Positions 3,001 to 59,877 of a stretch of 64,000 bases of DNA are shown here, piece by piece; position 1 is the first letter of the stretch, and every line of letters begins with the position of its first letter. This stretch comes from Macrostomum lignano (Eukaryota). The stretch lies in NCBI GenBank assembly GCA_002269645.1, contig NIVC01002211.1:128045-192044 (forward strand), given 5' to 3'. Under the pieces are notes generated by a model, which saw only the letters and a list, made by a program, of their open reading frames with translations, searched no databases and had not been told where the DNA came from. Made by a program: the position numbers and the translations under genes.

Positions 3001-4437
3001 TAGGGATGGGGTTGTAGGGATGGGGTTGTAGGGATGGGGTTGTAGGGATGGGATTGTAGGGATGGTGAGGTTGTAGGGATGGGGTTGTAGGGATGGGGTT
3101 GTAGGGATGGGGTTGTCGTGATGGTGGGGTTGTAGGGATCGGGCTGTAGGTATGTGGATCGGACTTAAGTAAAGGTTATGAGATTCATTTAAAATACAAA
3201 TATACAGTGAGAATCGCAACTGCAATGTTTGCCTCTCACCTGACCGTAAATATGATAGAACGGCAGCACTCCCAGATACGGGCCGGACATGACGGGCGGT
3301 CGCACTGTGCGATTGTACTGCAGCAGGTTAATGCAGATGTTACTGTGGCTCAGCTGCACTCCCTTGGGCAGGCCTGTGGTGCCGCTGCTGTAGGGTAGAA
3401 TGGCCACGCGTTTCGACGGGTCCAGCTGCCAGTCGTCAAGGCTGCGCGGACCGTCGGAGTCGACCAGCAGCTCGTCAAAGTGATGCGCACCGGACATAAG
3501 CTTGTCAACGACGTAGATGTCCTTGGGACAGCGGAGCGGTAGTGTACAATTGAAGCACAGTTGGAGGAGGAATAGAGTACATTGAGGGCCGGAGCTGGTG
3601 GAGACAGTCCATGACCCCGTGTGTACATTGAGGGGCAGAGTTGTTAGGGACAGTCTATGGCCCCGTGTGTACACTGAGGGGCAGAGTTGTTAGGGACAGT
3701 CTATGGCCGCGTGTGTACATTGAGGGGCAGAGTTGTTAGGGACAGTCTATGGCCCCGTGTGTACACTGAGGGGCAGAAATGTTGGGAACAGTCTATGGCT
3801 GGGTGTGTACATTGAGGGGCAGAGTTGTTGGGGACAGTCTATAGCCGCGTGTGTACATTGCAGTGAATACACAGTGAATACATGTACACAGAATGGAGTT
3901 GGCAACAGAGCAGCCTCTCCCCTCACCTTCACGCAGCCGGCCTCTTTGGCAGCTTTGGCGGCAATCTCGAATTTATCGGCCTGAGTAACAACAGCCACGG
4001 CGCCGGAATGACGCAGCTGATAAGCCAGCTCGCTGGCCGTAAAATTCGGATTAGCCAGTGTCAAAGTAGCGCCAGCGATCATGCCGCCTAATTGGGCCAG
4101 CACGAACTCCGGGCAGTTGTGCAGGAACAGCGCCAGAACGGCGCCATCAACGATGCCGTGACGTGCCAGGCCGCCGGCGGCGTTCAACGAAAGGTCGCGA
4201 ACGTCGGCGAGGGTCAGTACTCGGTGGCTGCCACCATCGTCATTTTCCGTCCGCGCCGAGACGTCGATTAGCGCCGGGCGGTTGGGAGCCTCGTCAACGC
4301 GACTAAGCGTCAAGCTAGGATATCCGAGAAGGCTGTTGAGCTCAGAGGCAGGGATATCCGGCACAGGGCTGTGGATGATCCGGCGCTGTCGAATGGGATC
4401 CGCTTTACTGTAGGACTGATTAGCAGGAATAACCGGC

Positions 4438-4536
<99 letters not shown>

Positions 4537-4634
4537 CATCAGCTCACCGCTGATTGCTGCTGACGCTGCTGACTGCCACCGCTTGCTGCTGCGCTGGAGC
4601 TGCCGCTGCACCAACGCCGCGTAACCAGCCGCAT
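26..4634 (-). CDS. Luciferase-like / 4-coumarate-CoA ligase-like acyl-CoA synthetase (ANL adenylate-forming family), 6 exons
   Basis: Exons (minus): 4634-4548, ~4415-3927, 3521-3240, 2437-2155, 1208-914, 350-26. All have GT..AG ends; phases match for exons 2-6, and the exon 2 acceptor could be 4415 or 4407. Motifs YSSGTTGLPKGV (AMP-binding), LPFYHIYG, YGLTETS, HTGD, DRVKELIKVKG.QVAPAELE, PSGKILRR. Confidence 0.92.
355..840. repeat. GA-rich polypurine low-complexity tract in intron 5 of the acyl-CoA synthetase
   Basis: Almost only G/A with scattered T (gaagggagg-type units). Confidence 0.85.
1255..2100 (+). repeat. Minisatellite with core ccatccctacaacc (intron 4)
   Basis: Direct reading; ~850 bp of ccatccctacaacc/ccatccctacagcctta variants. 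Confidence 0.95.
2455..3135 (-). repeat. Same minisatellite family in the opposite orientation (gggttgtagggatgg on +; intron 3)
   Basis: The unit is the reverse complement of the intron-4 unit. Confidence 0.95.
3575..3865. repeat. ~46-bp tandem repeat (gtgtacattgaggggcagagttgttagggacagtctatggcccc), ~6 copies, intron 2
   Basis: Unit starts at 3621 and 3667. Confidence 0.9.
4437..4536. repeat. (CAGA)n microsatellite in intron 1
   Basis: Direct reading. Confidence 0.95.
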
Positions 4635-6184: not shown

Positions 6185-8089
6185 TTAATAATAATGTCCG
6201 CCTCTTTGATCTCTACCGCCGCGACCAGATTGCCCGCCTCTTTGAACTCTACCGCCGCGAGCAGATTGCCATTCTCTTTGATCTCCGCCGCTGCGAGCAG
6301 ATTGCCATTCTCTTTGATCTCTACCGCCGCGAGCAGATTGCCATTCTCTTTGATCTCCGCCGCTGCGAGCAGATTGCCATTCTCTTTGATCTCTGCCGCC
6401 GCGAGCAGATTGCCATTCTCTTTGATCTCTACCGCCGTGAGCAGATTGCCATTCTCTTTGATCTCTACCGCCGTGAGCAGATTGCCATTCTCTTTGATCT
6501 CTACCGCCGTGAGCAGATTGCCCGCCTCTTTGATCTCTACCGCCGCGAGCAGATCGCCAGCGAGAAGATTGCCCGCCTCTTTGATCTCTACCGCCGCGAG
6601 CAGATTGCCATTCTCTCTGATCTCCGCCGCTGCGAGCAGATTGCCATTCTCTCTGATCTCCGCCGCTGCGAGCAGATTGCCATTCTCTCTGATCTCTGCC
6701 GCCGCGAGCAGATTGCCATTCTCTTTGATCTCTACCGCCGCGAGCAGATTGTCCGCCTCTTTGATCACCGCCGCCGCGAGCAGATGGTTTGCCTCCTCGG
6801 TCTTTTTGATGTTTACCGCCCTGACTCAACTGCTTCCGAGCGCCGTTACTCTGATTCCAAAGTTGGCATTCCGAAATCTCTTCAGCCTGCGACAGCCAAT
6901 TGCACCAGATATTCGAGCTGGTCTCCATAGCAACCCGGTCGCCAATGACAACAATACAACGTCTCGCTCGCGTAAAGAGAACTTCAAAATCCGACTGCTC
7001 AGCATCAGACAACAAGCTATTGGCATCTGCATGTACAATGACAAAGTCGGTCTCGAGACCACGGAATTCATCAACGCTAGCCACCTGAACATCCCGAAGG
7101 TGCAAGGATTGGCCAACCCGATCGGACGCACCTGACAGTGTCAGGACGGCAATGGCTTCCAAAGATTCAGTTTCCAGTAGAACAGCGAGAACCCGGTCAA
7201 TCAGCTCGATAGATGAAGCTGCCGAGCCTTCATCGCAGTTGATAAAGCAGACAGCGGGAAAAACCATCGGCGGCGGCAGGGTGGGCGGCGGCGCCGGCAT
7301 CTCGAGTGCCGGCCAGCTGAAGCATCGGCTGGGCAGGCTGGCCAGTTCCGGCCGCATCCGGTGCTGCACAGTCAGCGCCAGGGCGTTCGACGTCGTTGCC
7401 GCCGCCACCGCTAGCCGATGGTCAGTTCCCAGCAGCACGACACGCCTGGAGCATCGGGCCAGAGCGCAGAGCGCGGCCGACTCGGGCGACTCGTTTGCAT
7501 CGTCAATCAGCGCCAAGGAAAACCGGACGTCGTACAAGCCGCCAATCGACGTCGACAACGCCAGAATCACGTCGGCGGAGCGCAGAAGGCGCTGCTGCAT
7601 CGTCTGGCTGTCGTTTAAACTGTCGTCATCCGTGCCGAACTCTTCCAGGCGTCGACGTTGGATTTGCGCGTCGATTGTCAGATCGGCGACGTCGGGAGCG
7701 ACGAGGCCAGACGATGGCAGGCGGAGCAGCAGTAGGCACGGAGCGGCGAGGCGCAGCCGTCGAGCCAGACTGTCGAGAGCGGCGTCGGACTGGGCGCAGA
7801 GGAAAATCGGCAGAAACGATGCCGCCGCCGCCGCCGCCGCCGCCGCCGCCCGGCAGACGATGCTGACGGCCAGCGCGGACTTTCCCGTGCCCGGCGGCCC
7901 GCCGATGAACAGCAGGCCTGGATCCGGTTTCGAACTCAGGACGACTGCCAGCGCGGCCCGTTGCGAGGCGTCGAGTCGCTCTAAATCTGCGTCGATATCC
8001 GCGCTTAGCGACACAGCTTTCTGCTGTTTTGGAGCAAGGATAGGGAATAGGATTATGAGGATGAGGATGAGGTTGATCATGATGATGAT

Positions 8090-8124
<35 letters not shown>

Positions 8125-8158
8125 GAGAATGGTGAGGATGATAATAATTATGATAATA

Positions 8159-8190
<32 letters not shown>

Positions 8191-8224
8191 GAGAATGGTG
8201 AGGATGATAATAATTATGATAATA

Positions 8225-8256
<32 letters not shown>

Positions 8257-8453
8257 GAGAATGGTGAGGATGATAATAATGATGATAATAATGATAATGA
8301 TGATGATGATGATGATGATGAAGAGAATGGTGAGGATGATAATAATTATGATAATAATGATGATGATGGTGATGATGATGATGATGATCATGATGATGAT
8401 GATGAAGAGAATGGTGAGGATGATAATAATTATGATAATAATGATGATGATGG

Positions 8454-8484
<31 letters not shown>

Positions 8485-8518
8485 GAGAATGGTGAGGATG
8501 ATAATAATTATGATAATA

Positions 8519-8550
<32 letters not shown>

Positions 8551-8689
8551 GAGAATGGTGAGGATGATAATAATGATGATAATAATGATGATAATAATGA
8601 TGATGATGATGATGATGAAGAGAATGGTGAGGATGATAATAATTATGATAATAATGATGATGATGATGATGATGATGATTATGATGATA

Positions 8690-8755
<66 letters not shown>

Positions 8756-11700
8756 ATGATGATAATGATGATGATGATGAAGAGGATAAACGAGGTAAAG
8801 ATAGGGATAAGTATGCTGCAGCAACGTGTCCAAAGATGCACTATTACGAGCTATCAACTCAAGCCGCGGTCTCACGCACTCTAAGAGCGACGGTTTCTGC
8901 GAGCCACCGAGTCACGTGACCCGTGCACTCGAAGCGGGCCAGCGGCGACTCTTTCGGGTGGCCCCGCGGATCAGCCAGCAGATCGAGCGCTCGCTTCAAC
9001 AGTCGATCGTTGCCAATATTCTCCTCGTTGTCAGCAGCCCGGAGGCAGCGTCTCAGAGCGTCAAACACTTCCCTGTAGCTGTCGATGCCACCCGCAGGAG
9101 GTTCGCGCAGCTGCCAGCAGCCGCCGCCCTGCCAACAAGCCGGCAGCGTTGTTAGGAGGCAGCCGCGCGAGTCCAAGCCGCGCAGACAGACCAAGGCTCG
9201 ACCGTCGTCCAGACGCCGACAGGCGACAACTTGAACAAGGCAGCAGAAGCCGCCAGCCGAAGTCGCCGATGCCAGCAGCAGCGACATAAACCGGCCTGGG
9301 CGCGGCTGATGTCGCTGCCAGTCAATCGGCGCCCGACTTGTCAGCCAAAACTCCGACAGTTCGTTAGCGGGATTCGCAGGCTCGACAGTCTCCGCCGGCA
9401 CCGACCGGTCGGACTCCCAGCTGTCAGCCGACAGGCCGGATGATTGACAGCCGCTCAGAAACCCCTGACAGGCCAGCGAGGCCTGGTGCCGCAGATACCG
9501 ATGCACCGGCGTCAGCGGCGACACCCTAGTAGATTCCGTCAACATCGGCAGTAGAAGTTGTTCAGCAAATCTCTGTGCTACGGCAGGCGAACTGGCGGCA
9601 ACGTGGAGCAGCGGCCACCAGCAGTGCCAGGCGCCGGCAACGTCCAGCAGCTCGGCGGTGGAAGCTTCGGCTAGCGATAAAAGCGACGACAGCAGACGGT
9701 CAGCGGTGGCGTCGGCAGCCAGGCGTCGCAGCGATGTGAACAGTTCCAGTAGCCCTGCAGACGGCTGGTCTCCGAACCTGACGGAAGCTGGGTCGAAGAA
9801 CAGCTGAGCGACAATCTTGTCGATGTCGGCCAGAGCTGAGGCTGGCAGCGGCCTCGGAGCCGCCAGCAAATGCAGACGGTCTAGCAGGGCCCGCAGGCGG
9901 TCTGGCACCGAGCCAAGCTCCGACGGTGGCCACGCGCGCAGCGAGTCGATGAACAAGCGAGGCGAGGCAAAGGCGACGGCCGCGTCCAGGCACTGCAGCG
10001 TCGGAGTCGGCGAAGGCATTGAATCGTGGGACGGCGGCTGCAGCAGCATCGGGTCGACGAACTCGTTGACTGCGTGAGCCAGTTGGGGCCGGTTGGGAGC
10101 TGGGAACTCGACCTGGGCAGAAGGAGACGGGAGAGTGCACTGCTGGAGAGGCTAGATCTACAGAGGCACTGTCTAGATCTGCAAAACTATTGTCTAGATC
10201 TATAAAACCACTGTCTAGATCTACAAAATCACTGTCTAGATCTACAAAATCACTGTCTAGATCTACAAAATCACTGTCTAGATCTACAAAATCACTGTCT
10301 AGATCTACAAAATCACTGTCTAGATCTACAAAATCACTGTCTAGATCTACAAAACCACTGTTTAGATCTACAAAATCACTGCCTAGATCTACAAAACTAC
10401 TGTCTAGATCTGCAAAACGATTGCCTAGATCTATAAAACTACTGTCTAGATCTACAAAATCACTGTCTAGATCTACAAAACTACTGTCTAGATCTACAAA
10501 ACTACTGTCTAGATCTACAAAATCACTGTCTAGATCTACAAAATCACTGTCTAGATCTACAAAATCACTGTCTAAATCTACAAAATCACTGTCTAGATCT
10601 ACAAAATCACTGTCTAGATCAACAAAATCACTGTCTAGATCTACAAAATCACTGTCTAGATCTACAAGATCACTGTCTAGATCTACAAAATCACTGTCTA
10701 GATGAGTTGCTCCCACGCAGATCTCACCTGTCGGACATCAGCGGCCCACCAGTTGACATCGGCCACATCCAGATAGCCAGTGGCCCGCCCGTCCGCCGGG
10801 TCGCCCTGGGCAGACTCGAGCACGAACATCTCGGCCTCAATAAATGGCACCTTCCGTACCAGCATCCCAGCTTGCGCCCGCCTCCTGTCGCCAGGCAAGT
10901 CGAACCGGGTCAGGTCTACGCTGATGGACGTCAGGCCGTCGGGCCCGCCGCCGTCATTCAGCCACACAAAAGTGCCCCTGCGATCGCCTTTGTAGAGCTG
11001 CAACGAGTGCTCCGATAAGTCCAGGCTGTGTCCCGGACTCAGTCGGTGCTGCCTACGGCAGTTGAGCAGGCCGGAGAAGAAAAACGCCCGGACACTGTCC
11101 GGAGGCATGTCAGCCCGTTCGCAGATTGTCAGCTGCCGTTGGAACAGCAGGGCGAGGCACAGCTGGTCTGGCAGACGCAGCAAGAGAAGACTAAACAGAA
11201 TGTAGGGATTTCAATTGAATTAGACTGGGCTAATCTCTCGCTCAGATCCCTAATCTCACTCTTAGATCCCTAATCTAACTCTCAGATACCTAATTTTACT
11301 CTCAGATACCTAATTTCACTCCCAGATCCCTAATCTCACTCTTAGATCCCTAATCTCACTCTCAGATACCTAATCTCACTCTCAGATACCTAATTTCACT
11401 CTCAGATCCCTAATCTCACTCTCAGATCCCTAATCTCACTCTCAGATCCCTAATCTCACTCTCAGATACCTAATCTCACTCTTAGATCCCTAATCTCACT
11501 CTCAGATACCTAATCTCACTCTCAGATACCTAATTTCACTCTCAGATCCCTAATCTCACTCTCAGATCCCTAATCTCACTCTCAGATCCCTAATCTCACT
11601 CTCAGATCCCTAATTTCACTCTCAGATCCCTAATCTCACTCTTAGATCCCTAATCTAACTCTCAGATACCTAATTTTACTCTCAGATACCTAATTTCACT

Positions 11701-14700
11701 CCCAGATCCCTAATCTCACTCTTAGATCCCTAATCTCACTCTCAGATACCTAATCTCACTCTCAGATACCTAATTTCACTCTCAGATCCCTAATCTCACT
11801 CTCAGATCCCTAATCTCACTCTCAGATCCCTAATCTCACTCTCAGATACCTAATTTCACTCCCAGATCCCTAATCTCACTCTTAGATCCCTAATCTCACT
11901 CTCAGATGCCTAATCTCACTCTCAGATCCCTAATCTCACTCTCAGATCCCTAATCTCACTTTCAGATGCCTAATCTCACTCTCAGATCCCTAATCTCACT
12001 TTAAGATGCCTAATCTCACTCTCAGATCCCTAATCTCACTCTCAGATGCCTAATCTCACTCTCAGATGCCTAATCTCACTCTCAGATCCCTAATCTCACT
12101 CTCAGATGCCTAATATCACTCTCAGATCCCTAATCTCACTTCCCAATCCCTAATCTCACTGTCAGATCCCTAATCTCACTCTCAGATCCCTAATATCACT
12201 GTCAGATCCCTAATCTCACTTCCCAATCTCACTTCCTAATCTCACTCTCAGATCCCTAATCTCACTTCCCAATCTCTAATCTCACTCTCAGATCCCTAAT
12301 CACAATCTCAGATCCTTAATATCACTCTCAAATCCCTAATTTCACCCTCAGATCCCTAATCTCACTCTCAGATCCATAATCTCACTTTCAAATCCCTAAT
12401 CTCACTCTCAGATCCCTAATCTCACTGTCAGATCCCTAATCTCACTGTCAGATCCCTAATTTCACTCTCAGATCCCTAATCTCACTCTCAGATCCCTAAT
12501 CACAATCTCAGATCCTTAATATCACTCTCAAATCCCCAATTTCACCCTCAGATCCCTAATCTCACTCTCAGATCCCTAATCTCACTTTCAGATCCCTAAT
12601 CTCACTCTCAGATCCCTAATCTCACTCTCAGATCCCTAATCTCACTTTCAGATCCCTAATCTCACTCTCAGATCCCTAATCTCACTTTCAGATCCCTAAT
12701 CTCACTCTGAGATCCCTATTCTCAATTCCCAATCTCTAATTTCTCTCAGATCCCCAGAATCTTTTCCAGCTCCAATGTCTTGGCTTCATCAGTTAATTGT
12801 CACGCCTAAACGCGAGGGAAGTCTCACCTTTTAGAATGCCGCTCCAGACCGCGCAGCAGGTGGGCCCAGTCGAACTCGGACTGGCCGCGCCGAAAGTACA
12901 GCCGCCATCGACAGTCCACGCCGGCCAAGCCGAAAGCTGACCGGTCGTCCGGCCTGGCGAGCAGGCGCGACTTGTTCAGCGCGTTGAGCACCAGAGGCGC
13001 TGGCAGGCCGATCTCGTGGATTGCGATTCGCTGCTGATCGAGACTGAACTTGCCAAAGTCTACCAGATCGGTGTAGGCGTCCTTGAGCATCGTCCTGCTG
13101 TCTGCAGAGTAGGTTTAGGTGGCTCAGATAGTAGGAATGGCACTCAGATAGTAGGAATGGCACTCAGATAGTAGGAATGGCACTCAGATAGTAGGAATGG
13201 CACTCAGATAGTAAGAATGGCACTCAGATAGTAAGAATGGCACTCAGATAGTAGGAATGGCACTCAGATAGTAGGAATGGCACTCAGATAGTAGGAATGG
13301 CACTCAGATAGTAGAAATGGCACTCAGATAGTAGGAATGGCACTCAGATAGTAAGAATGGCACTCAGATAGTAAGAATGGCACTCAGATAGTAGGAATGG
13401 CACTCAGATAGTAGGAATGGCACTCAGATAGTAGGAATGGCACTCAGATAGTAGAAATGGCACTCAGATAGTAGATATGGCACTCAGATAGTAAGAATGG
13501 CACTCAGATAGTAAGAATGGCACTCAGATAGTAGGAATGGCACTCAAATAGTAGAAATGGCACTCAGATAGTAGGAATGGCACTCAGATAGTAGAAATGG
13601 CACTCAGATAGTAGAAATGGCACTCAGATAGTAGGAATGGCACTCAGATAGTAGAAATGGCACTCAGATAGTAGGAATGGCACTCAGATAGTAGGAATGG
13701 CACTCAGATAGTCGGAATGGCACTCAGATAGTAGAAATGGCACTCAGATAGTAGATATGGCACTCAGATAGTAAGAATGGCACTCAGATAGTAAGAATGG
13801 CACTCAGATAGTAGGAATGGCACTCAAATAGTAGAAATGGCACTCAGATAGTAGGAATGGCACTCAGATAGTAGAAATGGCACTCAGATAGTAGAAATGG
13901 CACTCAGATAGTAGGAATGGCACTCAGATAGTAGAAATGGCACTCAGATAGTAGGAATGGCACTCAGATAGTAGGAATGGCACTCAGATAGTCGGAATGG
14001 CACTCAGATAGTAGAAATGGCACTCAGATAGTAGGAATGGCACTCAGATAGTAGAAATGGCACTCAGCTAGTAGGAATGGCACTCAGATAGTAGGAATGG
14101 CACTCAGATAGTAGGAATGGCACTCAGATAGTAGGAATGGCACTCAGATAGTAGGAATGGCACTCAGATAGTAGGAATGGCACTCAGATAGTAGGAATGG
14201 CACTCAGATAGTAGAAATGGCACTCAGATAGTAGGAATGGCACTCAGATAGTAGAAATGGCACTCAGATAGTAGGAATGGCACTCAGAAAGTAGGAATGG
14301 CACTCAGATAGTAGAAATGGCACTCAGATAGTAGAAATGGCACTCAGATAGTAGGAATGGCACTCAGATAGTAGAAATGGCACTCAGATAGTAGGAATGG
14401 CACTCAGATAGTAGGAATGGCACTCAGATAGTAGGAATGGCACTCAGATAGTAGAAATGGCACTCAGATAGTAGAAATGGCACTCAGATAGTAGGAATGG
14501 CACTCAGATAGTAGAAATGGCACTCAGATAGTAGGAATGGCACTTAGGAGTGGCGCCAAGATGATAGGAGTGGCGCTAAGATGATGGGAGTGGCTGATAG
14601 GAGTGGCGCCAAGATGATAGGAGTGGCTGATAGGAGTGGCGCCAAGATGATAGGAGTGGCGCCAAGATGATAGGAGTGGCGCCAAGATGATAGGAGTGGC

Positions 14701-17700
14701 GCCAAGATGATGGGAGTGGCTGATAGGAGTGGCGCCAAGATGATAGGAGTGGCTGATAGGAGTGGCGCCAAGATGATAGGAGTGGCGCCAAGATGATAGG
14801 AGTGGCGCCAAGATGATAGGAGTGGCGCCAGGATGATAGGAGTGGCGCCAAGACGATAGGAAGCCAGTGCTGGCATCTAAGAAAAATTACCTTCCACCTT
14901 CCCTCCTCACCTTCCACCTGCTCGCACCGGGCCCGACAGAAATCCCAAGCGAACTGGAATTTGCAAAACTCGCTGATCCGTCCGAACTCGTGCCGACTGC
15001 TCAACAGGTCGACGACAAACTCCGGCCGAACGTTGTCCACCGTGAGGGTCGGATAGCTATCGTCGTCGGTTTTGGTTGTCGCCGCCGTCGCTCGGGCGGC
15101 AACAGCGGCTTTGACAAACAGATCGCTCCGCAGTCTTCGACCTCTCGCGAGCATTCGCTGCCAGACGAATTCTCTGGGGTTTGCTGCACCTGCTGCCGTC
15201 GGCAACCGGAGCTTCGGGTCGATGCTCACCAACTCGCCAGACTTTGCGGCGTCAACGGCGCGGGAGAACAGACGGCCGAGTTCACAGCACTGCCAGCAGT
15301 CCGGCCCCAGGCTGTCTGCCCAGCTCTTGTACAGAGTGTCGATTTCTGACGTGACAGCATGAAATTTATTCTGGCTGGCAAAGTGCCGGATAAGATCATT
15401 TTTTGTCGGCGGCCTGACAGATGCAGGCACCTCGGCAGCTGGGTAGTGGTACGGCTCAGCTTGATGCAGAGGCAACAGGTCTGCGGGATGAGGATCCTCA
15501 ACTCATTATCTTTGCGCTCTTAATTAGAAACATCTTGGCTACTCTATAGAGTACACTTCAGCCACTTTTCAAAATAAATTTTAGCCGCTCGTAAGAATAC
15601 ACCTAGGCCACTCTATAAAGTACACTCTTTAAAGTACATCTCCACTACACTTTAGAGTAAATTTAGCCACTCTTTAAAGTACAACTCGGCCAATCTTTAA
15701 AGTACATTTATCCACTCTTTAAAGTACATCTCGACCACTCTTTAAAGTACATCTCGACTACTCTTTAAAAGTGCAATTAAACGCTTTTAAAGTACATTTT
15801 AGCCTCCTTTTACAGTACATCTCAGACAGCACAGCGAATACACACACAATGATCAAGCAACTGGGTCTCCTCACCGGGATCCCAGCACACAAAGAATTGA
15901 TCCCCGTCCAGGTCGGAGCCGGAAATCTCGCTAGGATGCGACCGCGGTCCCCGCACCGGGAACACGATGCAGTCCACCAGGTGGTTCAGCGCCGCCAGTC
16001 CCGGCTTGTCCTCGTCAGTGACAGCCAGAAGCACCCGAACGTCGCCCAGCAGGTAGCAGGGACTCTTCGTCACCACAACCTGACCGCGCAGACTCAGCGG
16101 CGAGCCGCCGTCAGTGATCCGGACGAAGCATTCGCCGTATTCTAACAGCTGCTCATTGGTTTGGTCGCAGACTCCGAACAGGTTGCGGGACAGCGGCACC
16201 AGGATGTGCAGGCGGTCGCAGCGTTCAAGCAGCTTCGATTGAAAGCTGGCGAGTCTGGCGCGCAGAATTTTGTGCCTCTGCGCCATGGCGTCCTGAGATT
16301 TTGATGATGTAGGATGAACTGGGAGTCTGGATCCTTCAAGTCAGAACAGACATGAATCTCACTAATCACCTGAGAGCCGGACAATGCCTAATGATGAATC
16401 TCTCTAATCACCTTAGTGCTAGACAATGCCTAATGATGAATCTCTCTAATCACCTTGGTGCTAGACAATGCCTAATGATGAATCTCTCTAATCACCTTAG
16501 TGCTAGACAATGCCTAATGATGAATCTCTCTAATCACCTTAGTGCTAGACAATGCCTAATGATGAATCTCTCTAATCACCTTAGTGCTAGACAATGCCTA
16601 ATGATGAATCTCTCTAATCACCTTAGTGCTAGACAATGCCTAATGATGAATCTCTCTAATCACCTGAGAGCCGGACAATGCCTAATGATGAATCTCTCTA
16701 ATCACCTGAGAGCTGGACAATGCCTAATGATGAATCTCTCTAATCACCTGAGAGCTGGACAATGCCTAATGATGAATCTCTCTAATCACCTGAGAGCCGG
16801 ACAATGCCTAATGATGAATCTCTCTAATCACCTGAGAGCCGGACAATGCCTAATGATGAATCTCTCTAATCACCTGAGAGCCGGACAATGCCTAATGATG
16901 AATCTCTCTAATCAACTGAGAGCTGGACAATGCCTAATGATGAATCTCTCTAATCACCTGAGAGCTGGACAATGCCTAATGATGAATCTCTCTAATCACC
17001 TGAGAGCCAGACAATGCCTAATAATGAATCTGTGTGCCCAGCAACAAAGAATATTCCACTCACGCTAATCAAGTCGGACCCGGCTGGCGCAGTCAGCGTC
17101 TCCTTGTGCATGCGCAGCAGCTGACTTGCCAGAAGGAATTCGCCTCGCCAGCGCAGCACAGCGATGGCCGCTTCAGGATCCGTTGCCATGCGGCGGAGCC
17201 GGTCGAAGTGCTCAGACTGGCGGGCCAGGAAGGCGGAGTCGGGCACGCCCAGGCCTGAGGGAGGGAGACGATGAGACAAAAGTTACACTTGGCTCTACTT
17301 GACTTAAATCACATGGTGCTCTACTCAATCTACCCGGTATTCTACTCAATCTACCCGGTATTCTACTCAATCTACCCGATATTCTACTTAATCTACCCGA
17401 TATTCTACCCGGTATTCTACTTAATCTACCCGGTATTCTACTTAATCTACCCGGTATTCTACTTAATCTACCCGGTATTCTACTTAATCTACCCGTTTTC
17501 TATTCTAGCAAATAGAACAGATATTTTTCCATTGACATACCCGAAAGCAAAGTAATAAACTGCCTGTTCAGCTGTCCGAAAGTGTAAGGTCGCGAATATT
17601 CGCACAGACTAATTTCCGAGTGCTTTTCGGTTTGAAATTTCAGCATCGACGGTCGAACTAGCATACGCGGCGCCGAGCCGAGACTGCGGTCCTGGGCCAG

Positions 17701-20700
17701 CACGCCTTTGTAGCCGCGGTAGCGGATCTGGGCGGCGGTTGACAACTTCGATGCTTAAATTACTTATAAATACCAAATATAGACGGAGTGGGGTGGCTGC
17801 AGATAAGGCAGGGAGTGGGGTGGCTGCAGATAAGGCAGGGAGTGGGGTGGCTGCAGATAAGGCAGGGAGTGGGGTAGCTGCAGATAAGGCAGGGAGTGGG
17901 GTGGCTGCATATAAGGCAGGGAGTGGGGTGGCTGCAGATAAGACAGGGAGTGGGGTGGTTGCAGATAAAACACGGAGTGGGGTGGCTGCAGATAAGGCAG
18001 GGAGTGGGGTGGCTGCAGATAAGGCAGGGAGTGGGGTGGCTGCAGATAAGGCAGGGAGTGGGGTAGCTGCAGATAAGACAGGGAGTGAGGTGGTTGCAGA
18101 TAAAACACGGAGTGGGGTGGCTGCATGGAAGGCAGGGAGTGGGGTGGCTGCATATAAGGCAGGGAGTGGGGTGGTTGCAGATAAAACACGGAGTGGGGTG
18201 GCTGCAGGTAAGGCAGAGTTAAGGTTAAATTTGCATTCAGATAGCCGTCCCCTAACCTGATAGACGGACGGTAGGGCAGCTTGGCGTGCAGCGGGTCCGT
18301 CGCCGTCTGCGCACCCCATGGACGCCAGGAACTCCTCGTCCGTGTCGTCGCCTTCGCCGAACACACCGGCGCAGATTTGACGAGCCAGCTCTGGACTGAC
18401 GCTGCCGCAGCCGTCGGTGAAACAACTGCGAGCGTTTTGAATGTCAGCAGCTTCGATCAGCCAGTCAGACGGAACCGTCACGTGACTGGGGCGGACAGAG
18501 CTGAATAGCAGGCCGATTCTGGCCTGGCGCTTGGGCACGCTTGGGATCGCCTGAGAATCACGCGGACGGATTTCAATTCATTTTAAGCATGCTATTTGCA
18601 ACAGAATTTGCAACTAGATAGTGACTCATTCCGTAAACTAATATGTGACTAGTTCCGTGAACTGATCAGTGACTCATTTCGTAAGCTAGACAGTGACCCA
18701 TTCCGTAAGCTAGGCAGTGACTCATTCCGTAAGCTAGACAGTGACCCATTCCGTAAGCTAGACAGTGACCCATTCCGTAAGCTAGGCAGTGACTCATTCC
18801 GTAAGCTAGACAGTGACTCATTCCGTAAGCTAGACAGTGACTCATCAACGAATACAAGAGAAACTCACTAGAAAGGGATTTACTTAAAATGGGCAAAAAT
18901 CTCACCTGAAACTCCCCGTGCGAGGCCAACACAGCCTCCGCATCGGAGGCGCCGCCCTGCCACAGGTAGCACTTGCGCTGCTTCAATCCGCCAGAGCTGC
19001 AGCCCAGATATGAGAATTGCTGCCCAGCAACTAGCAGCGAGTTTCCCTCTAGTAGAAAATGCTCCACAGTCGAGCTGGGCACCCGCTGTTCGAACTGCAA
19101 CAACAGAAGCCGATCGGGACCTTCAACATCTATCAATCGGTTCTCTACCAACTCCCAGGACTGTTTGGCGAAGTGCTCCGACACAGTCAGCACCCGGATT
19201 CGGTGCCCGCGCTGTCGCCGACTGCTCGACTGATTGTGGAGAAGCGACAACGGTACTTTGTTGCCGCAGTCCTGAGCTGACGGAGGCGGATCCACGTAGA
19301 AGGCCAGATGATGCAGAATCGACTGCTTGACAGCTGGCTTCTTCTTTTTGGCGCCCAGCTCGGCGTAGTGCTTCAGCGAGGCCGTTGCTAGGGGAAACTC
19401 GCCTTCGATTGCGCTGTTCAGGGATCTTTGGCGGATGAAGGGGATGGGGGTAAATTGAATAGTTTGATTGACAGCCCTGTCTGATGGACAGTAGTAATTT
19501 TCGGCCAGTTATGTACTTTTAATTTTACTCTCTTCTTTCGCTCTGATTACTCACATTCCACAGGTACTTCCCATTATTTTTTTCTCATTTCTTATCTATT
19601 GCGATTTCCTAATCTTTGCGTCTCATTACTCACGATTCCCTGATTCTCACATCTCATCATTCACGATTCCCAAATCATGTATCACCATTCACGATTACCT
19701 GATCCTCACGTCTCATCATTCACGATTCCCAAATCATGTATCACCATTCACGATTACCTGATCCTCACGTCTCATCATTCACGATTCCCAAATCATGTAT
19801 CACCATTCACGATTACCTGATCCTCACGTCTCATCATTCACGATTCCCAAATCATGTATCACCATTCACGATTACCTGATCCTCACGTCTCATCATTCAC
19901 GATTCCCAAATCATGTATCACCATTCACGATTACCTGATCCTCACGTCTCATCATTCACGATTCCCAAATCATGTATCACCATTCACGATTACTTGATCC
20001 TCACGTCTCATCATTCACGATTCCCAAATCCTCACTTATCGTCATTCACATTTTTAATGCTTCGGAGGGTCTCTAGAGCCTAGTTTGTTACAGATAGAAA
20101 GTTAAGCAAAGCCGGCTGTGGTTAGTACTTCACGCAGAGCTGCACTCACTTCGCCGCGGCAGCCAGGCCATCCTCAGTGGAAGCGTCAACAACCAGCCCC
20201 ATGAGTGGCACCAACAGGTGGTCGCACAGTTCAACGAATTCTTTCACATATTCCTCGTCAACCGCGGCGTTGAAGTCAACAACTGGACGGCGAATTAGCA
20301 CGACAAGGGAGCTGCGGTAGAGGGCGACGCTCTCGCCCAGCTGTCCGTCGACAATGTCGACGTCCGTTCGGCCATGCTCGAGCAGCAAGTCTAGCGCCGA
20401 ATTGGCGCTGGCAAAATCTGGCGCCATCGACTCCTCTTGGCGCCGAATTTCGGCCAGAGACGAATCGAAATTTTCGCATCGAGTTCGTCGAATCGTTCGC
20501 CGGCGACATCTGCGCAGAGCGTCGGAGTGGCGACACGCGGCCAGCAGACGGTCCTGAAGCTCTTCAAGGCTGCGACCGCAGAGAATCAGGCGCATGTGGG
20601 AGCTGCAAGATGTGGGGATGTAGGGTTTTATGGATGTAGGGATGCAGGGTTTTATCGATGTAGGGATGTAGGGTTTTATGGGTGTAGGGATGAAGGGTTT

Positions 20701-21810
20701 TATGGATGTAGGGATGCAGGGTTTTATGGATGTATGGATGTACCATGTAGGGTTTTATCGATGTAGGGATTTAGTGTTTTATGGATGTAGGGATGTAGGG
20801 TTTTATGGATGTAGGGATGTAGGGTTTATGGATGTAGGGATGTAGGGATGTTTTATGGATGTAGGGATGTAGGGATGTTTTTATTGATGTAGGGATGTAG
20901 GGTTTATGAATGTAGGGATGTAGGGTTTTATGGATGTAGGGATGTTGGGTTTTTTGGATGTAGGGATGTAGGGTTTATGGATGTAGGGATGTAGGGTTTT
21001 ATGGATGTAGGGATGTTGGGTTTTTTGGATGTAGGGATGTAGGGTTTATGGATGTAGGGATGTAGGGATGTAGTGATGTGGGGATGTAGGATTTTATGCA
21101 TGTAAGGCAGTAGAAATTGTAGGGTCGTGTAGATGCAGGGATGTAGGTTTGTAAGGATGCAGACACGTAAGGTAACGGATGCAGAGCTGTAGGGATGTAG
21201 GGCTGTTGACTAAACAATTATAAGCAAAAGCCCAATAATGTTTAGTTTAGCAGCTTAGATGACACTGATAAAGAAGCAGATAAATAAGTAACAGGTTAGA
21301 CTACAATGGTTTTAATTAATCATTAAAAATGAATAATTTATCTGTTGCGATTGTGTTAGACATTATTGCTCAGTATATATTTCCACTCTCTAAATAGAAT
21401 ATCAATGTTTAAACAATTTGAAATTCAAACAAAAACAAACAAAAAACGAAGTCCAACACCTAAAGACAAGAGTACCAGGGTAAATAAAACAAATAAAAGT
21501 TAGCAACAATATCTGGAAGTGCGGCGAATATTTTTATAACAGGCCGGAAAAAATCAGCCATTAGGGCAAGTGCGTTACTAAAAAATTGAGATAAAAAATG
21601 TTCTAGTCAGAGTATGGAATGTAATAACAATGCCTGGTATTAAGTATATAGCTGCTTTGTAAATAATACAACTATTGAGACACACTATACTAGCCCACCG
21701 TGACTGCTGCTAATGGAATGCTTTCGAATTTTTTTTTATTAAAAAATGAAATTTGCAAGCAAAACAATTACCTTAAAAAATCGATGAGATGGGAGGCAGA
21801 GGTGTATACA
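6185..21810 (-). CDS. Cellular RNA-dependent RNA polymerase (RNAi-type) fused to a C-terminal Upf1-like SF1 helicase and an RGG-repeat tail; 5' end unresolved
   Basis: Exons (minus): [21810-21772 tentative], 20569-20150, 19425-18906, 18550-18257, 17727-17541, 17254-17064, 16292-15875, 15480-14911, 13101-12828, 11190-10728, 10112-8880, 8023-6185. Every junction is GT..AG and phase-compatible (6448 nt in total, 2149 codons after the first partial codon). Junctions rebuild RdRP motifs: GEFQ/AIPSVPKRQARIGLLFS, PSVYQ/IRYRGYKG, LNRQFITLLS/GLGVP, GSDLDGDQFFVCWDP/DLLP. AATAAA overlaps the TAA stop. Confidence 0.88.
6190..6790 (-). repeat. 36-bp coding tandem repeat (SARGGRDQREWQ, ~16 units)
   Basis: In frame with the helicase with no stop until GGHYY*; poly(A) signal at the stop. 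Confidence 0.8.
6870..8023 (-). CDS. Upf1/DNA2/NAM7-like SF1 helicase domain (terminal exon), degenerate motifs
   Basis: LDASQRAA (Q motif), GPPGTGKS (7877-7900), CAQSDAALD, IDDANE, QHRM, SVDEFRGLE, FTRAR in the expected order. Confidence 0.88.
8050..8780. repeat. (GAT)n-based higher-order repeat filling intron 8024-8879
   Basis: (gat)n runs punctuated by the recurring unit gaagagaatggtgaggatgataataattatgataataat. Confidence 0.93.
10150..10702. repeat. 21-bp intronic minisatellite (tctagatctacaaaatcactg)
   Basis: Direct reading; lies inside intron 10113-10727. Confidence 0.95.
11240..12740. repeat. 20-bp intronic minisatellite (ctcagatccctaatctcact), ~70 copies
   Basis: Direct reading; inside intron 11191-12827. 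Confidence 0.95.
13121..14860. repeat. Two abutting 20-bp intronic minisatellites (cactcagatagtaggaatgg, ~70 copies; then ggagtggcgccaagatgata)
   Basis: Direct reading; the unit switches near 14540; inside intron 13102-14910. Confidence 0.95.
15200..19425 (-). CDS. RdRP catalytic domain exons (eukaryotic double-psi-barrel RdRP)
   Basis: FSYLGCSSGGLK, FTDGCG, QIRYRGYKG, RPSMLKF, TKSPCYLLGDVR, HLVDCIVFP, catalytic DLDGD at 15900-15914, LFSRAVDAAKSG. Confidence 0.95.
15540..15830. repeat. Degenerate intronic repeat (cactctttaaagtacat core)
   Basis: Recurrent ctttaaagtaca motif in intron 15481-15874. Confidence 0.75.
16352..17030. repeat. 42-bp intronic minisatellite, ~16 copies
   Basis: atgaatctctctaatcacctgagagccggacaatgcctaatg; inside intron 16293-17063. 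Confidence 0.95.
17330..17500. repeat. 21-bp intronic repeat (ctacccggtattctacttaat)
   Basis: Direct reading; inside intron 17255-17540. Confidence 0.9.
17785..18210. repeat. 27-bp intronic minisatellite (gcagggagtggggtggctgcagataag)
   Basis: Direct reading; inside intron 17728-18256. Confidence 0.93.
18615..18845. repeat. 24-bp intronic repeat (gtgactcattccgtaagctagaca)
   Basis: Direct reading; inside intron 18551-18905. Confidence 0.9.
19630..20045. repeat. 59-bp dimeric intronic minisatellite
   Basis: Unit starts at 19662 and 19721; each unit has two related cacgatt-headed subunits. Confidence 0.9.
20605..21200. repeat. gtagggat(gtagggttttatggat) minisatellite
   Basis: Direct reading. 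Confidence 0.9.
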
Positions 21811-21867
21811 CTGACAGGGCGGGTGATGTGAGATTCCTCTGTGGCTAACTAACTCTGATGGGTTAGG

Positions 21868-22450
21868 ATGGGCTGTGGGGGATGGGATGGGGCTGTGGGG
21901 AGTGGGATGGGGCTTTGGGGGTGGGATGGGGCTGTGAGGGATGGGATGGGGTTGTGGGGAGTGGGATGGGGCTGTAGGAGGAGTGGGATGGGGCTTTGGG
22001 GGATGGGATGGGGCTGTGGGGGATGGGATGGGGCTGTGGGGAGTGGGATGGGGCTGTGAGGAAGTGGGATGGGGCTGTAGGAGGAGTGGGATGGGGCTTT
22101 GGGGGATGGGATGGGGCTGTAGGGGAGTGGGATGGGGCTTTGGGGGAGTGGAATGGGGCTTTGGGGAGTGAGAAGTGGGATGGGGCTTTAGGGGAGAGGG
22201 ATGGGGCTGTAGGCGGAGTGGGATGGGGCTGTAGGCGGAGTGGGATGGGGCTGTAGGCGGAGTGGGATGGGGCTGTAGGGGGAGTGGGATGGGGCTTTAG
22301 GGAGGGGGATGGGGCTGTAGGGGGAGTGGGATGGGGCTGTAGGGGGAGTGGGATGGGGCTGTAGGGGAGTGGGATGGGGCTTTAGGGAGGGGGATGGGGC
22401 TGCAGGGGAGTGGGATGGGGATGTAGGGGCAGTGGGATGGGGCTGTGAGG
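21868..22450. repeat. G-rich minisatellite (gggatggggctgtagggggagt), G-quadruplex-prone
   Basis: Dense runs of 3-5 G separated by short loops. Confidence 0.9.
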
Positions 22451-23549
22451 TAGGGAGGGGGCTTATTTGCAGAAAAATGCACAGACCGTGAGATTAATAA
22501 CACCTGCATAATTATGAGTATAGAGGCGAACATTACACAACATTTCAGCATGCATTCAAGTTGCAAATCCGATAAAACGATATTAGAGAAAAATTATTTA
22601 AAAAAACAAAAGTTAAACTCAGAAACCAAAAAGAGTAAAATAAACTTTAAAGATTGTTAGACCGCAATATCCAATGTATCAACAGTGAATAAAATTCTCA
22701 TCAAAGAAAGTAAACAGTTTACAACTGGAAGGCAACCTTAAGTATCAATTGTAAAAAATAGCTTATTTTATGATTTCACGAAACCGAAACTACTCATGCG
22801 ATAGTAGTATGTTCAGCAGTTTAAGAGTTCAATTAATCAATAGCTCAATAACGGGGTTACTTTTGTCATAACCTGGGTCAGATTATTAAATTTGTATTAG
22901 AAAATTCATCAAAAATTAACAAAAATTGATAATAAATAATAATATCAAAAAGAAGAGATTATAAACGTTATTTTCTGACAAGACGAAAGAAATTACATAG
23001 CAGAAAGATCGAAAAAGTACAAAGACCGGAATGACTATATCTGTTTCTAATTGACGGTTTTAAATTAGAAAAAAAGTTGTTTTTAAAAGTCCAAAAGTCC
23101 TTACTGTGCTACTAACAGTAAGGAAAAAGGAAAAAAAATCATTAAAAATTCGAAATTCCATCAACAAGGCGAAACACAGGGCCAAATTCTCTGTTAATTT
23201 TTAAAAAAGGCGCGAAATATTTAGGAAAAACATTAAAACAAATTATGATGTGGCCAGATTGTGGGAGATTGCGGACTGTACGATCGAGAATGGTTAGAAT
23301 GTTGTCTACAGCCAGCAAAAAAATTTGATCAGAGAGAGGAAAACTTCGACACCAGACTAGAAGTGAAAGCAAAATGGGATTCTTTAATCTGCATTAAGAA
23401 AATATTTTCAAAATTAAAAATTGTGTCAGTTGTTAAACGGTACGAGAATTAGGATCTGGGAGTCTGAATTTATGTAATCGGATTTTCAGCAGCAAATCCA
23501 AATAATATATGGGAGATTTATCCAAGGAATATTTAGGAGATTTTATCCA

Positions 23550-26303: not shown

Positions 26304-26327
26304 TCAACACCCTCACAACAGAGCCAG

Positions 26328-36228: not shown

Positions 36229-47010
<10,782 letters not shown>

Positions 47011-59808: not shown

Positions 59809-59877
59809 GACAGCATCGGCCACAAATCGTCAACAAACAATTAAGCTGATCGTGAGCTGCGGGAATAAATTTCCACG

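What the first reader, a model, noticed from the sequence alone, without database searches (positions are those of the whole stretch)
6185..21810. Single-chain RdRP - Upf1-like helicase - RGG/Trp tail: a fused siRNA-amplification machine
Seen: eleven firm exons plus one tentative micro-exon splice in phase from a catalytically intact DLDGD RdRP, through ~800 aa of intervening sequence, into an SF1 helicase and a low-complexity tail, with no frameshift needed. Known: RdRPs work with separate Upf1-like helicases (S. pombe Rdp1 with Hrr1 in the RDRC; C. elegans EGO-1 with ZNFX-1; Arabidopsis RDR6 with SDE3), and animal RdRPs are patchily distributed. Inference: this is a Rosetta-stone fusion encoding an RDRC-like complex in one gene in a flatworm-like animal. 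Similar fusions may already exist in other invertebrates; I cannot check this.
Basis: partly seen in the sequence, partly recalled or inferred. Interest (0 to 1): 0.9.

Follow-up and report, generated by a model that had tools for sequence, protein, structure and literature searches.

The report
Flatworm RdRP fused to degenerate helicase
One Macrostomum lignano gene joins an intact RNA-dependent RNA polymerase to a TLDc-like domain, a Upf1-type helicase that has lost most catalytic motifs, and an RGG-repeat tail; the fusion is real, but it belongs to a family already present in sponges, cnidarians, amphioxus and fungi.

Summary
Eleven GT-AG exons on the minus strand (20595-6185) splice in phase into a 2161-aa ORF. 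No micro-exon is needed, and the CDS starts at 20595, not 21810. The window is Macrostomum lignano. The spliced protein aligns end to end with single-chain RdRP+AAA_11/AAA_12 proteins of a sea anemone, sponges, many unnamed eukaryotes and fungi, so the fusion is a conserved gene, not an artefact. It is also not new. Amphioxus BL02069 (RdRP+AAA_12) was noted in 2019, and Fusarium FgRdRP5 was knocked out in 2024. New here: (1) the "linker" contains a TLDc-fold domain; (2) animal members start with an AAA_28 kinase-like P-loop, which is lost here; (3) the flatworm helicase keeps Walker A but only 45 of 82 family-conserved positions, against 74-82 of 82-87 in all 39 relatives. The losses include the Walker-B glutamate and motifs III, V and VI. 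The RdRP keeps 102 of 109. (4) The tail has 15 RGG and no GW/WG. Public M. lignano models stop before the helicase. I read it as an active RdRP with a non-catalytic helicase-like RNA/protein-binding module. A role in siRNA amplification is untested.

The parts
20150..20595 (-). Exon 1 (aa 1-149). The start ATG is at 20595-20593. It is a remnant of the family's N-terminal AAA_28/NRK-like P-loop domain with Walker A deleted: MRLILCGRS-LEEL against GIILCGASSIGKST in relatives.
   Evidence: alignment; AAA_28 scores 46-63 bits in P0002/P0009 and gives no hit here
18906..19476 (-). Exon 2 (aa 150-339). An alternative in-phase acceptor at 19425 is the one used by GenBank model P0001. The Pfam RdRP match begins at aa 276 (19097).
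18257..18550 (-). Exon 3, RdRP (…KRQARIGLLFSS…FTDGCG…PSVYQ)
17541..17727 (-). Exon 4, RdRP (IRYRGYKGVL…)
17064..17254 (-). Exon 5, RdRP
15875..16292 (-). Exon 6, the RdRP catalytic core. DLDGD (aa 690-694) lies at 15914-15900.
   Evidence: (E 1.1e-37)
14911..15480 (-). Exon 7. Holds the end of the RdRP domain (Pfam match ends at aa 793, 15209) and the start of the helical lead-in to the TLDc-like module (from aa 855, 15025).
12828..13101 (-). Exon 8. Helical part (…NALNKSRLL…) and the first strands of the TLDc-like domain.
10728..11190 (-). Exon 9. The TLDc-like beta-sandwich (to about aa 1110, 10812).
   Evidence: Foldseek top 15 hits are all TLDc domains; weak Pfam TLD hits in two relatives
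8880..10112 (-). Exon 10 (aa 1139-1549). Predicted alpha-helical repeat, then a small beta unit and long helices just upstream of the helicase core. It includes the family-conserved 'GxWxL…GN.T.F.R…AL' segment (GCWQLRE at 9122-9102).
   Evidence: (fold search not significant)
6896..8023 (-). Exon 11, first part: the Upf1-like SF1 helicase core (aa 1550-1925). Walker A GPPGTGKS lies at 7900-7877. Motif II is degenerate, IDDANE at 7507-7490. Motif III reads GTDHRL at 7429-7412. Motif IV QHRMRP at 7366-7349. Motif V reads DEFRGLE at 7072-7052. Motif VI reads …DFEVLFTRAR, with VLFTRAR at 6982-6962.
6185..6865 (-). Exon 11, second part: a 226-aa tail built of about 12-aa repeats (RGGRDQREWQSA) encoded by a 36-bp tandem array. 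It has 15 RGG, 13 W and no GW/WG. The stop codon is at 6187-6185.

Best explanation
This is one protein-coding gene of Macrostomum lignano, about 14.4 kb, 11 exons and 2161 aa. It is a member of a conserved eukaryotic family whose full animal architecture is: AAA_28 (nicotinamide-riboside-kinase-like) P-loop, eukaryotic RdRP, helical plus TLDc-fold domain, helical region, UPF1-like SF1 helicase, and a basic disordered tail.

Shown: the exon chain, the family membership, the intact RdRP centre, the TLDc-like fold, the loss of the N-terminal Walker A, and the loss of most helicase catalytic and coupling residues with Walker A retained.

Inferred: the protein works as an RNA-templated RNA polymerase. 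Its C-terminal half no longer translocates. It serves instead as a non-catalytic, possibly nucleotide-binding, RNA clamp or protein-docking platform. The RGG-repeat tail adds unspecific RNA binding or condensate targeting.

Whether its products feed an Argonaute pathway (secondary siRNAs) is plausible by analogy but not shown.
For: Single gene and family:
- Phase-compatible GT-AG junctions.
- Collinear tblastn hits, one per exon.
- End-to-end alignment with Actinostola QZH41_005767 (31% identity, 95% coverage, E 5e-216) and about 45 other PF05183+PF13086/13087 proteins.
- Several relatives of about 2000 aa lie on contigs of only 7-9 kb, that is, as one uninterrupted ORF.
- The family-specific middle module finds 307 cluster representatives. 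In the long ones it sits at about aa 600-1100.
- The end of exon 10 aligns with the conserved segment that precedes the helicase in relatives.

RdRP intact:
- 348 bits to Pfam (relatives 375-398), DLDGD present, 102 of 109 conserved columns kept.
- Best solved relative is Arabidopsis RDR2, 1e-50.

Helicase degenerate:
- 45 of 82 conserved columns kept, against 74-82 of 82-87 in 39 relatives (Fisher p = 2e-10 against the protein's own RdRP).
- E1724D, Q1727E, D1749T, Q1752R, Q1870R, R1894D, N1896E, and deletions in motif V.
- AAA_12 scores 34 bits against 165-175, and AAA_11 59 against 129-148.
- 50 bits to UPF1 against 215 for a sponge member.

Still coding:
- 612-codon open frame.
- GC1/GC2/GC3 of the helicase part (0.68/0.49/0.68) match the other exons.
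- The ORF is also intact in the second genomic copy.

TLDc:
- AF2 pLDDT 86, pTM 0.82. The Foldseek top 15 are all TLDc domains, E 8e-6, probability 1.0.

Tail:
- R/G-rich or CCCH-zinc-finger tails recur in animal relatives.
Against: - No transcript evidence was available for the 8880/8023 junction. Both public M. lignano models stop earlier: P0001 in exon 10, A0A1I8FNC6 in exon 7.
- The other genomic copy (NIVC01001147.1) has a 1-nt deletion in exon 10. This could be an assembly error or a real frameshift.
- An in-frame ATG lies 22 codons upstream of exon 11 inside intron 10, so a separate helicase-only transcript cannot be excluded from sequence alone.
- Glu to Asp in Walker B and an intact Walker A and arginine (TRAR) leave room for residual ATPase activity.
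- No close relative of the degenerate helicase was found, so purifying selection on it could not be measured. There were only 3 substitutions between the two copies.
- The exon-10 model gave no significant fold match.
Confidence: 0.6

Rival explanations
1. One reading: a fully active single-chain RDRC-like machine in which the Upf1-like helicase hydrolyses ATP to remodel template RNA for the RdRP, and the Trp-containing tail recruits Argonaute.
For: Walker A GPPGTGKS, the motif IV QHRM and the motif VI arginine (TRAR) are kept. Both Pfam helicase halves pass their thresholds. The architecture is conserved with canonical helicases in relatives. The Fusarium FgRdRP5 deletion partly lowers ex-siRNAs.
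Against: 37 of 82 family-conserved helicase columns are changed. These include residues invariant in all 39 relatives: Walker-B Glu, motif III Asp/Gln, motif V Gln, motif VI Arg/Asn. There is no GW/WG in the tail. No Cid12-like nucleotidyltransferase or other RDRC part was found by Pfam. Amphioxus, which has this architecture, showed no convincing RdRP-derived small RNAs.
Confidence: 0.12
2. Two genes: an RdRP-TLDc gene that ends in or after exon 10, and a separate helicase-like/RGG gene with its own promoter in intron 10.
For: Public annotations end before the helicase exon. An in-frame ATG (MINLIL…) lies 22 codons upstream of exon 11. The reading frame of exon 10 meets a stop 18 nt past the donor if the intron is unspliced.
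Against: The truncated GenBank model is explained by a 1-nt deletion in that assembly. The donor GTGCGT and acceptor …AAAACAG are phase-compatible. Relatives encode the segments matching exon 10 and exon 11 in one ORF. A helicase starting in exon 11 would lack the conserved pre-helicase segment.
Confidence: 0.08
3. A decaying gene: the helicase/tail exon, or the whole locus, is a relic on its way to pseudogenisation. The tail is just one more expanding minisatellite that happens to be in frame.
For: The helicase motifs are degenerate and the N-terminal P-loop is lost. The tail has atypical codon composition (GC3 0.33 against 0.63-0.80 elsewhere). It differs by repeat-unit indels between the two copies. 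There is a frameshift in exon 10 of the other copy. Minisatellites fill every intron.
Against: The RdRP keeps 94% of conserved columns. There are no stops or frameshifts in 2161 codons in the window. At this composition a random 385-codon stretch stays open with a probability of roughly 1e-6 (my estimate). The helicase part shows the codon-position GC pattern of the other exons. R/G-rich tails are common in animal relatives.
Confidence: 0.15

Closest known systems
Fusarium graminearum FgRdRP5 (PMC11237814)
   Same: Single chain with RdRP (PF05183) followed by a helicase. The paper places DEXDc at 1277-1478 and AAA PF13087 at 1475-1677. This layout and size match my fungal hits, for example Ascobolus P0040 with AAA_11/AAA_12 at 1307-1716.
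   Different: Fungal members lack the AAA_28 N-terminus and the C-terminal tail, and they have canonical helicase motifs. I did not compare the FgRdRP5 sequence itself. The link is by architecture and by fungal relatives only.
Branchiostoma lanceolatum BL02069 (Pinzón et al. 2019, PMC6396948)
   Same: An animal eukaryotic-type RdRP with an intact active site that also carries AAA_12.
   Different: That study found no convincing RdRP-derived small RNAs in amphioxus.
Actinostola QZH41_005767, Ephydatia muelleri EMCRGX_G018482, Geodia barretti GBAR_LOCUS15374 cluster (uncharacterised database proteins)
   Same: Collinear over up to 95% of the length: AAA_28, RdRP, TLDc-like middle module, UPF1-like helicase, basic tail.
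   Different: They keep the N-terminal Walker A (clear in the sponges, weaker in Actinostola) and canonical helicase motifs I-VI. The flatworm has lost both. Its tail is a 12-aa tandem repeat.
RdRP-helicase partnerships in trans: S. pombe RDRC (Rdp1-Hrr1-Cid12), C. elegans EGO-1/ZNFX-1, Arabidopsis RDR6/SDE3
   Same: An RdRP associated with an SF1 Upf1-like helicase. The fusion is the 'Rosetta stone' form of that pairing (established knowledge, not tested here).
   Different: The family's helicase is closest to UPF1 itself (1e-62), not to ZNFX1 (5.5e-40). There is no Cid12-like nucleotidyltransferase. In this flatworm the helicase is degenerate.
UPF1 / NAM7 (PDB 2xzo, 2gjk, 2xzl)
   Same: Best solved relative of the helicase module. 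Same motif order.
   Different: There is no CH domain. The window matches only the RecA1 half, at 50 bits, and the catalytic Glu is replaced.
TLDc-domain proteins (NCOA7, OXR1/OXR2, TBC1D24/Skywalker, mEAK7)
   Same: The predicted fold of aa ~950-1110 matches them (E 8e-6 to 1e-4, TM about 0.6 normalised to the target).
   Different: Sequence identity is 9-19%. Pfam TLD is not reached in the window and is only weak (E 0.036 and 0.15) in two relatives. Known TLDc proteins bind V-ATPase. Nothing links that to an RdRP.
RdRPs with an N-terminal DExD/H (SF2) helicase domain in Dictyostelium and oomycetes (Phytophthora survey PMC4791657, listed but not read; the architecture is from my own knowledge)
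   Same: RdRP and helicase in one chain.
   Different: A different helicase superfamily (SF2, Dicer-related), placed N-terminally. This is an independent fusion.

Membership tests
Eukaryotic RdRP (Pfam PF05183) | Domain match above the gathering score | tested here: met
   348.2 bits against a cutoff of 23.8, aa 276-793, profile positions 43-546 of 582
Eukaryotic RdRP (Pfam PF05183) | Catalytic DxDGD loop and conserved core residues | tested here: met
   SGSDLDGDQFFVCWD at aa 686-700; 102 of 109 family-conserved columns kept
Eukaryotic RdRP (Pfam PF05183) | RNA-templated polymerase activity | not testable with these tools
   Needs a biochemical assay
UPF1-like SF1B helicase (AAA_11 + AAA_12) | Both RecA-like halves recognisable | tested here: met
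   AAA_11 58.6 bits and AAA_12 34 bits, cutoffs 27. The best PDB hit is UPF1, but only over RecA1
UPF1-like SF1B helicase (AAA_11 + AAA_12) | Motif I (Walker A, GxxxxGK[ST]) | tested here: met
   GPPGTGKS, aa 1591-1598
UPF1-like SF1B helicase (AAA_11 + AAA_12) | Motif II DExxQ with the catalytic Glu | tested here: not met
   IDDANE. Glu is present in 39 of 39 relatives and Gln in 36 of 39
UPF1-like SF1B helicase (AAA_11 + AAA_12) | Motifs Ia, III, V and VI (GDxxQL, FQGRE…STVR, RxNVxxTRA) | tested here: not met
   The window reads AQSDAALDS, GTDHRL, FRGLE with the VR deleted, and DFEVLFTRAR. D1749T, Q1752R, Q1870R, R1894D and N1896E are each invariant in 39 of 39 relatives
RdRP-TLDc-UPF1-like helicase fusion family (Actinostola/Ephydatia/fungal type) | Collinear full-length similarity, RdRP N-terminal to helicase | tested here: met
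   E 5e-216 with 95% coverage of the query. tblastn is collinear
RdRP-TLDc-UPF1-like helicase fusion family (Actinostola/Ephydatia/fungal type) | Conserved middle module (NALNKS…LQLYR…SVDL…EVFV) | tested here: met
   Present in exons 7-9. The profile finds 307 cluster representatives
RdRP-TLDc-UPF1-like helicase fusion family (Actinostola/Ephydatia/fungal type) | N-terminal AAA_28 P-loop (animal members) | tested here: not met
   No Pfam hit, and Walker A is deleted in the alignment. Fungal members also lack it
TLDc domain (PF07534) | Sequence-profile match | tested here: not met
   No hit in the window. E 0.036 and 0.15 in two relatives, below the cutoff
TLDc domain (PF07534) | Fold similarity to solved TLDc domains | tested here: met
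   The model was built on the second-copy sequence P0001, which has 3 substitutions in this stretch. pLDDT 86. The top 15 PDB matches are all TLDc, E 8e-6 to 5e-3, probability 0.99-1.0
RDRC-type complex (Rdp1-Hrr1-Cid12) | Associated nucleotidyltransferase, and physical or functional coupling to Argonaute | tested here: not met
   The first half of the feature was tested: no nucleotidyltransferase domain in the chain by Pfam. The second half, interactions, is not testable with these tools
GW/WG Argonaute-hook proteins | Repeated GW or WG dipeptides in a disordered region | tested here: not met
   13 Trp in the tail, 11 as EWQ, and 0 GW/WG

The most novel reading that the evidence does not exclude
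The family itself (P-loop kinase-like, RdRP, TLDc, UPF1-like helicase) may be an ancient, self-contained RNA-surveillance enzyme of fungi and early-branching or patchily distributed animals whose job is not classical siRNA amplification. The flatworm copy would then show that the polymerase can be kept under selection while both NTPase modules are turned into non-catalytic scaffolds. That would be a natural separation-of-function variant, pointing to the RdRP plus TLDc core as the essential unit.
Probability: 0.25. Interest if true: 0.6.

Novelty: new member of a known kind. Interest (0 to 1): 0.4.

Why it matters
M. lignano is the only flatworm model reported to have eukaryotic RdRPs (PMC5594548; bioRxiv 10.64898/2026.03.11.711021). 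It is therefore the natural place to ask what animal RdRPs outside nematodes do.

This gene is fragmentary in public protein sets, so its helicase, TLDc and RGG parts have gone unnoticed. A correct full-length model matters for knock-down design, antibodies and phylogeny.

The family-level architecture gives testable hypotheses for several hundred uncharacterised proteins. The contrast between an intact polymerase and a decayed helicase tells experimenters which activity to assay first.

It does not overturn anything. The RdRP-helicase pairing is expected, and the fusion has been seen before.

Tried and rejected
1. Donors at 18884, 18869 and 18865 for exon 2. None is in phase with the acceptor at 18550, so I replaced them with 18906 (CAG|GTGAGA).

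2. A micro-exon or upstream coding exon between 20596 and 21810. There is no ORF with homology there. The homologues' N-termini align with the Met at 20595.

3. Frameshift or hidden-exon explanations for the degenerate helicase. tblastn finds a single-frame match across 8011-6419 and nothing in other frames or elsewhere in the window.

4. Aligning window fragments against full-length relatives (A2, A3). The fragment ends were scattered by MAFFT, so I discarded these and used trimmed sub-alignments instead.

I used the 98%-identical P0001 segment instead.

6. Fold search of the exon-10 model. No significant match (best E 0.11). Weak SETX and UPF1 hits are only suggestive of a helicase accessory barrel and stalk.

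7. Searching for close relatives of the degenerate helicase or of the linker, to measure selection or find paralogues. Only distant helicases and one mis-spliced M. lignano fragment came back.

8. A literature search for the locus tag returned nothing.

9. My guess that the ORFs at 59869-60591 and 63503-64000 are C-type lectins. Pfam gave no hit, so I dropped it.


Full report
**What is there.** On the minus strand between 20595 and 6185 lie long stop-free stretches separated by tandem-repeat blocks. Pfam places a eukaryotic RdRP (PF05183) in 16340-15825 (E 1e-37) and 15502-14900. It places AAA_11 (E 1e-15) and AAA_12 (E 3e-8) in 8023-6188. The result is eleven exons (20595-20150, 19476-18906, 18550-18257, 17727-17541, 17254-17064, 16292-15875, 15480-14911, 13101-12828, 11190-10728, 10112-8880, 8023-6185), all flanked by GT..AG. 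They join in phase into 6486 nt, 2161 codons, with one terminal stop. The spliced N-terminal part scores 348 bits against Pfam RdRP. DLDGD is at 15914-15900 and Walker A GPPGTGKS at 7900-7877. No micro-exon is needed, and nothing upstream of the ATG at 20595 looks coding.

**Whose genome, and is it one gene?** The best database hit is Macrostomum lignano BOX15_Mlig034233g2, "partial", 1522 aa, 98% identical. Its splice pattern equals mine except that exon 2 starts at 19425 instead of 19476. Both acceptors are in phase. The longer form adds 17 aa that align to a conserved IPF/IPY segment.

That protein comes from NIVC01001147.1 (GCA_002269645.1), a collinear second copy of the locus. There, exons 2-8 are 100% identical to the window. 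Exon 10 carries a 1-nt deletion at the position matching window 8965. This frameshifts the annotated protein and explains why it stops before the helicase. The helicase/RGG exon is present there, with its reading frame intact and unannotated. A UniProt model, A0A1I8FNC6, is a 585-aa mis-spliced fragment of the same gene. So no public M. lignano protein contains the helicase, and I had no transcript data for the 8880/8023 junction.

The case for a single chain therefore rests on comparative evidence, which is strong:
- About 45 proteins carry PF05183 plus PF13086/PF13087 in one chain and align with the whole query. Examples are Actinostola QZH41_005767 (31% identity over 95%, E 5e-216) and Ephydatia EMCRGX_G018482, with many unnamed ENA, Logan and JGI proteins and many fungi.
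- One cluster includes Geodia barretti.
- Several members of about 2000 aa sit on 7-9 kb contigs, that is, as one uninterrupted ORF.
- tblastn of three relatives against the window gives one hit per exon, in order, and nowhere else.
- The end of exon 10 (GCWQLRE…YREVFDALRRCL) aligns with the conserved GxWxL…GN.T.F.R…AL segment that precedes the helicase in relatives, and exon 11 starts just before the N.SQ…GPPGTGK motifs.

**The polymerase is intact and the helicase is not.** I aligned the protein with 39 relatives (A1) and counted columns where at least 85% of the relatives share a residue.
- In the RdRP region the flatworm keeps 102 of 109, the same range as the others (98-109).
- In the helicase region it keeps 45 of 82, whereas every relative keeps 74-82 of 82-87 (Fisher p = 2e-10).
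- Residues invariant in all 39 relatives are among the losses: Walker-B Glu (E1724D), motif III (D1749T, Q1752R), motif V Gln (Q1870R) with the following "VR" deleted, motif VI (R1894D, N1896E), motif Ia (T1628S, N1634S), and the PY..Q motif (Y1846S, Q1849S). Q1727E is also lost; that Gln is present in 36 of 39 relatives.
- Walker A, QHRM (motif IV) and the TRAR arginine remain.
- Pfam scores tell the same story: AAA_12 34 bits against 165-175, and AAA_11 59 against 129-148.
- A sponge helicase module matches UPF1 over its whole core (E 1e-62, 215 bits; ZNFX1 5.5e-40). The window matches UPF1 only over RecA1, at 50 bits.

The region is nevertheless an open frame of 612 codons. Its codon-position GC pattern matches the other exons, and its reading frame is intact in the second copy as well. 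I therefore read it as a retained but non-catalytic module rather than debris. That last step is inference. The two copies differ by only three substitutions there, too few for dN/dS.

**The rest of the architecture.** Animal relatives begin with an AAA_28 domain (46-63 bits), which JGI names nicotinamide riboside kinase. In the flatworm the Walker A is deleted (MRLILCGRS-LEEL against GIILCGASSIGKST) and Pfam finds nothing. Fungal members lack this domain.

The "intervening ~800 aa" is conserved. The model is confident (pLDDT 86, pTM 0.82). Its 15 best PDB matches are all TLDc domains: NCOA7, OXR2, Skywalker/TBC1D24, mEAK7 and Oxr1, at E 8e-6 to 5e-3 and probability 0.99-1.0. Two relatives give weak Pfam TLD hits at the same place. 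A profile of this module finds 307 representatives at E ≤ 1e-3 and 116 at E ≤ 1e-30. In the long proteins it lies at about aa 600-1100.

Exon 10 is predicted as a helical repeat followed by a small beta unit and long helices (pLDDT 70). The fold search was not significant. The weak SETX and UPF1 hits fit a helicase accessory region but do not prove one.

The tail is 226 aa encoded by a 36-bp tandem array. It has 15 RGG and 13 Trp, 11 of them as EWQ, and no GW/WG. Its GC3 of 0.33 is atypical, and it varies by repeat units between the two copies. Many animal relatives have basic R/G/S-rich tails, and the sponge members P0015 and P0016 have CCCH zinc fingers there. Fungal members end right after the helicase.

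**What is known.** M. lignano RdRPs have been reported: four genes in PMC5594548, confirmed in a 2026 preprint. Domain content beyond the RdRP was not discussed in the passages I read. Pinzón et al. drew amphioxus BL02069 as RdRP+AAA_12. They found no convincing RdRP-derived small RNAs and suggested functions unrelated to RNAi (PMC6396948). Fusarium FgRdRP5 is described as RdRP + DEXDc + AAA (PF13087). Its deletion reduces ascospore discharge and partly affects ex-siRNAs (PMC11237814). I link it to this family by architecture and by the fungal hits, not by direct sequence comparison. I found no paper linking TLDc to an RdRP. The closest solved RdRP is Arabidopsis RDR2 (1e-50), far ahead of QDE-1. 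I did not place the family within the alpha, beta or gamma clades.

**Verdict.** It overstates both novelty and mechanism. The architecture is already in the databases and the literature, and in this species the helicase has lost its catalytic signature. Most likely mechanism, at about 0.6: an active RdRP carrying a TLDc-like domain, a non-catalytic UPF1-like module that binds RNA or partners, and an RGG tail. Rivals: active RDRC-like machine (0.12), decaying gene or exon (0.15), two genes (0.08). Interest is moderate. The value lies in the corrected model, the TLDc and AAA_28 parts of the family, and the intact-polymerase, decayed-helicase contrast.

Noticed in passing
window 8024-20149 (the ten introns of the gene): 84% of intronic bases are tandem minisatellites, and each intron has its own unit: 20 bp x76 in 11230-12754, 20 bp x71 in 13123-14544, 42 bp x16 in 16352-17031, 59 bp x7 in 19630-20030, and others. 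Repeat copy numbers differ between the window and the second copy, L001.
   Followed up: partly
window 8024-8879 (intron 10): The intron is about 244 copies of GAT. On the coding strand it is stop-free and in frame with exon 11, giving a 908-codon open stretch (8911-6188) that would read as poly-His/Tyr. It contains an in-frame ATG (MINLIL…) 22 codons upstream of exon 11.
   Followed up: partly
L001 21495-22726 (NIVC01001147.1), equivalent to window 8965: A 1-nt deletion relative to the window frameshifts exon 10 in the GenBank assembly. This explains the 'partial' 1522-aa protein BOX15_Mlig034233g2. The helicase/RGG exon downstream (L001 22960-24746) has its reading frame intact but is unannotated. 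UniProt A0A1I8FNC6 is a 585-aa mis-spliced fragment of the same gene.
   Followed up: yes
window 6185-6868: The RGG-repeat tail has GC3 of 0.33 and GC2 of 0.65, against GC3 of 0.63-0.80 in all other exons. That fits a young in-frame minisatellite expansion.
   Followed up: partly
window 21866-22446 and about 23545-26304: Large tandem arrays lie upstream of the gene: a 22-bp unit x27.6, and an array of about 2.7 kb with a period of about 37 bp, inferred from the BLAST ladder against L001.
   Followed up: no
window 29-4538, minus strand: The downstream neighbour is an AMP-binding enzyme gene: PF00501 E 1.5e-20 in 3750-4538 and AMP-binding_C E 1.9e-22 in 29-517. Its introns are also full of repeats. 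The same neighbour is annotated in L001.
   Followed up: partly
window 53878-54561 (-) and 46333-47007 (+): There is a PX-domain exon (E 5.8e-11) and a weak rhodopsin-type 7TM match (E 7.7e-4, below the Pfam cutoff).
   Followed up: partly
window 59869-60591 (+) and 63503-64000 (+): Two similar Cys-rich ORFs (…CQLF.F..CSK.VR.C.CSRT..V.VKQQPGLPPGALCPAGY…CGTKYK…) have no Pfam hit. They are possibly a tandem pair of an uncharacterised secreted-protein family.
   Followed up: no
window 30001-34000: GC drops to 0.33, against 0.41-0.62 in the rest of the window. I did not examine this.
   Followed up: no
relatives P0015, P0016 (sponge cluster incl. Geodia barretti) and P0005, P0007, P0012, P0013: The C-terminal tails of animal family members are variable RNA-binding-type appendages: CCCH zinc fingers (PF00642/PF18345) in the sponge cluster and R/G/S-rich disordered tails in others. 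Fungal members have no tail.
   Followed up: partly
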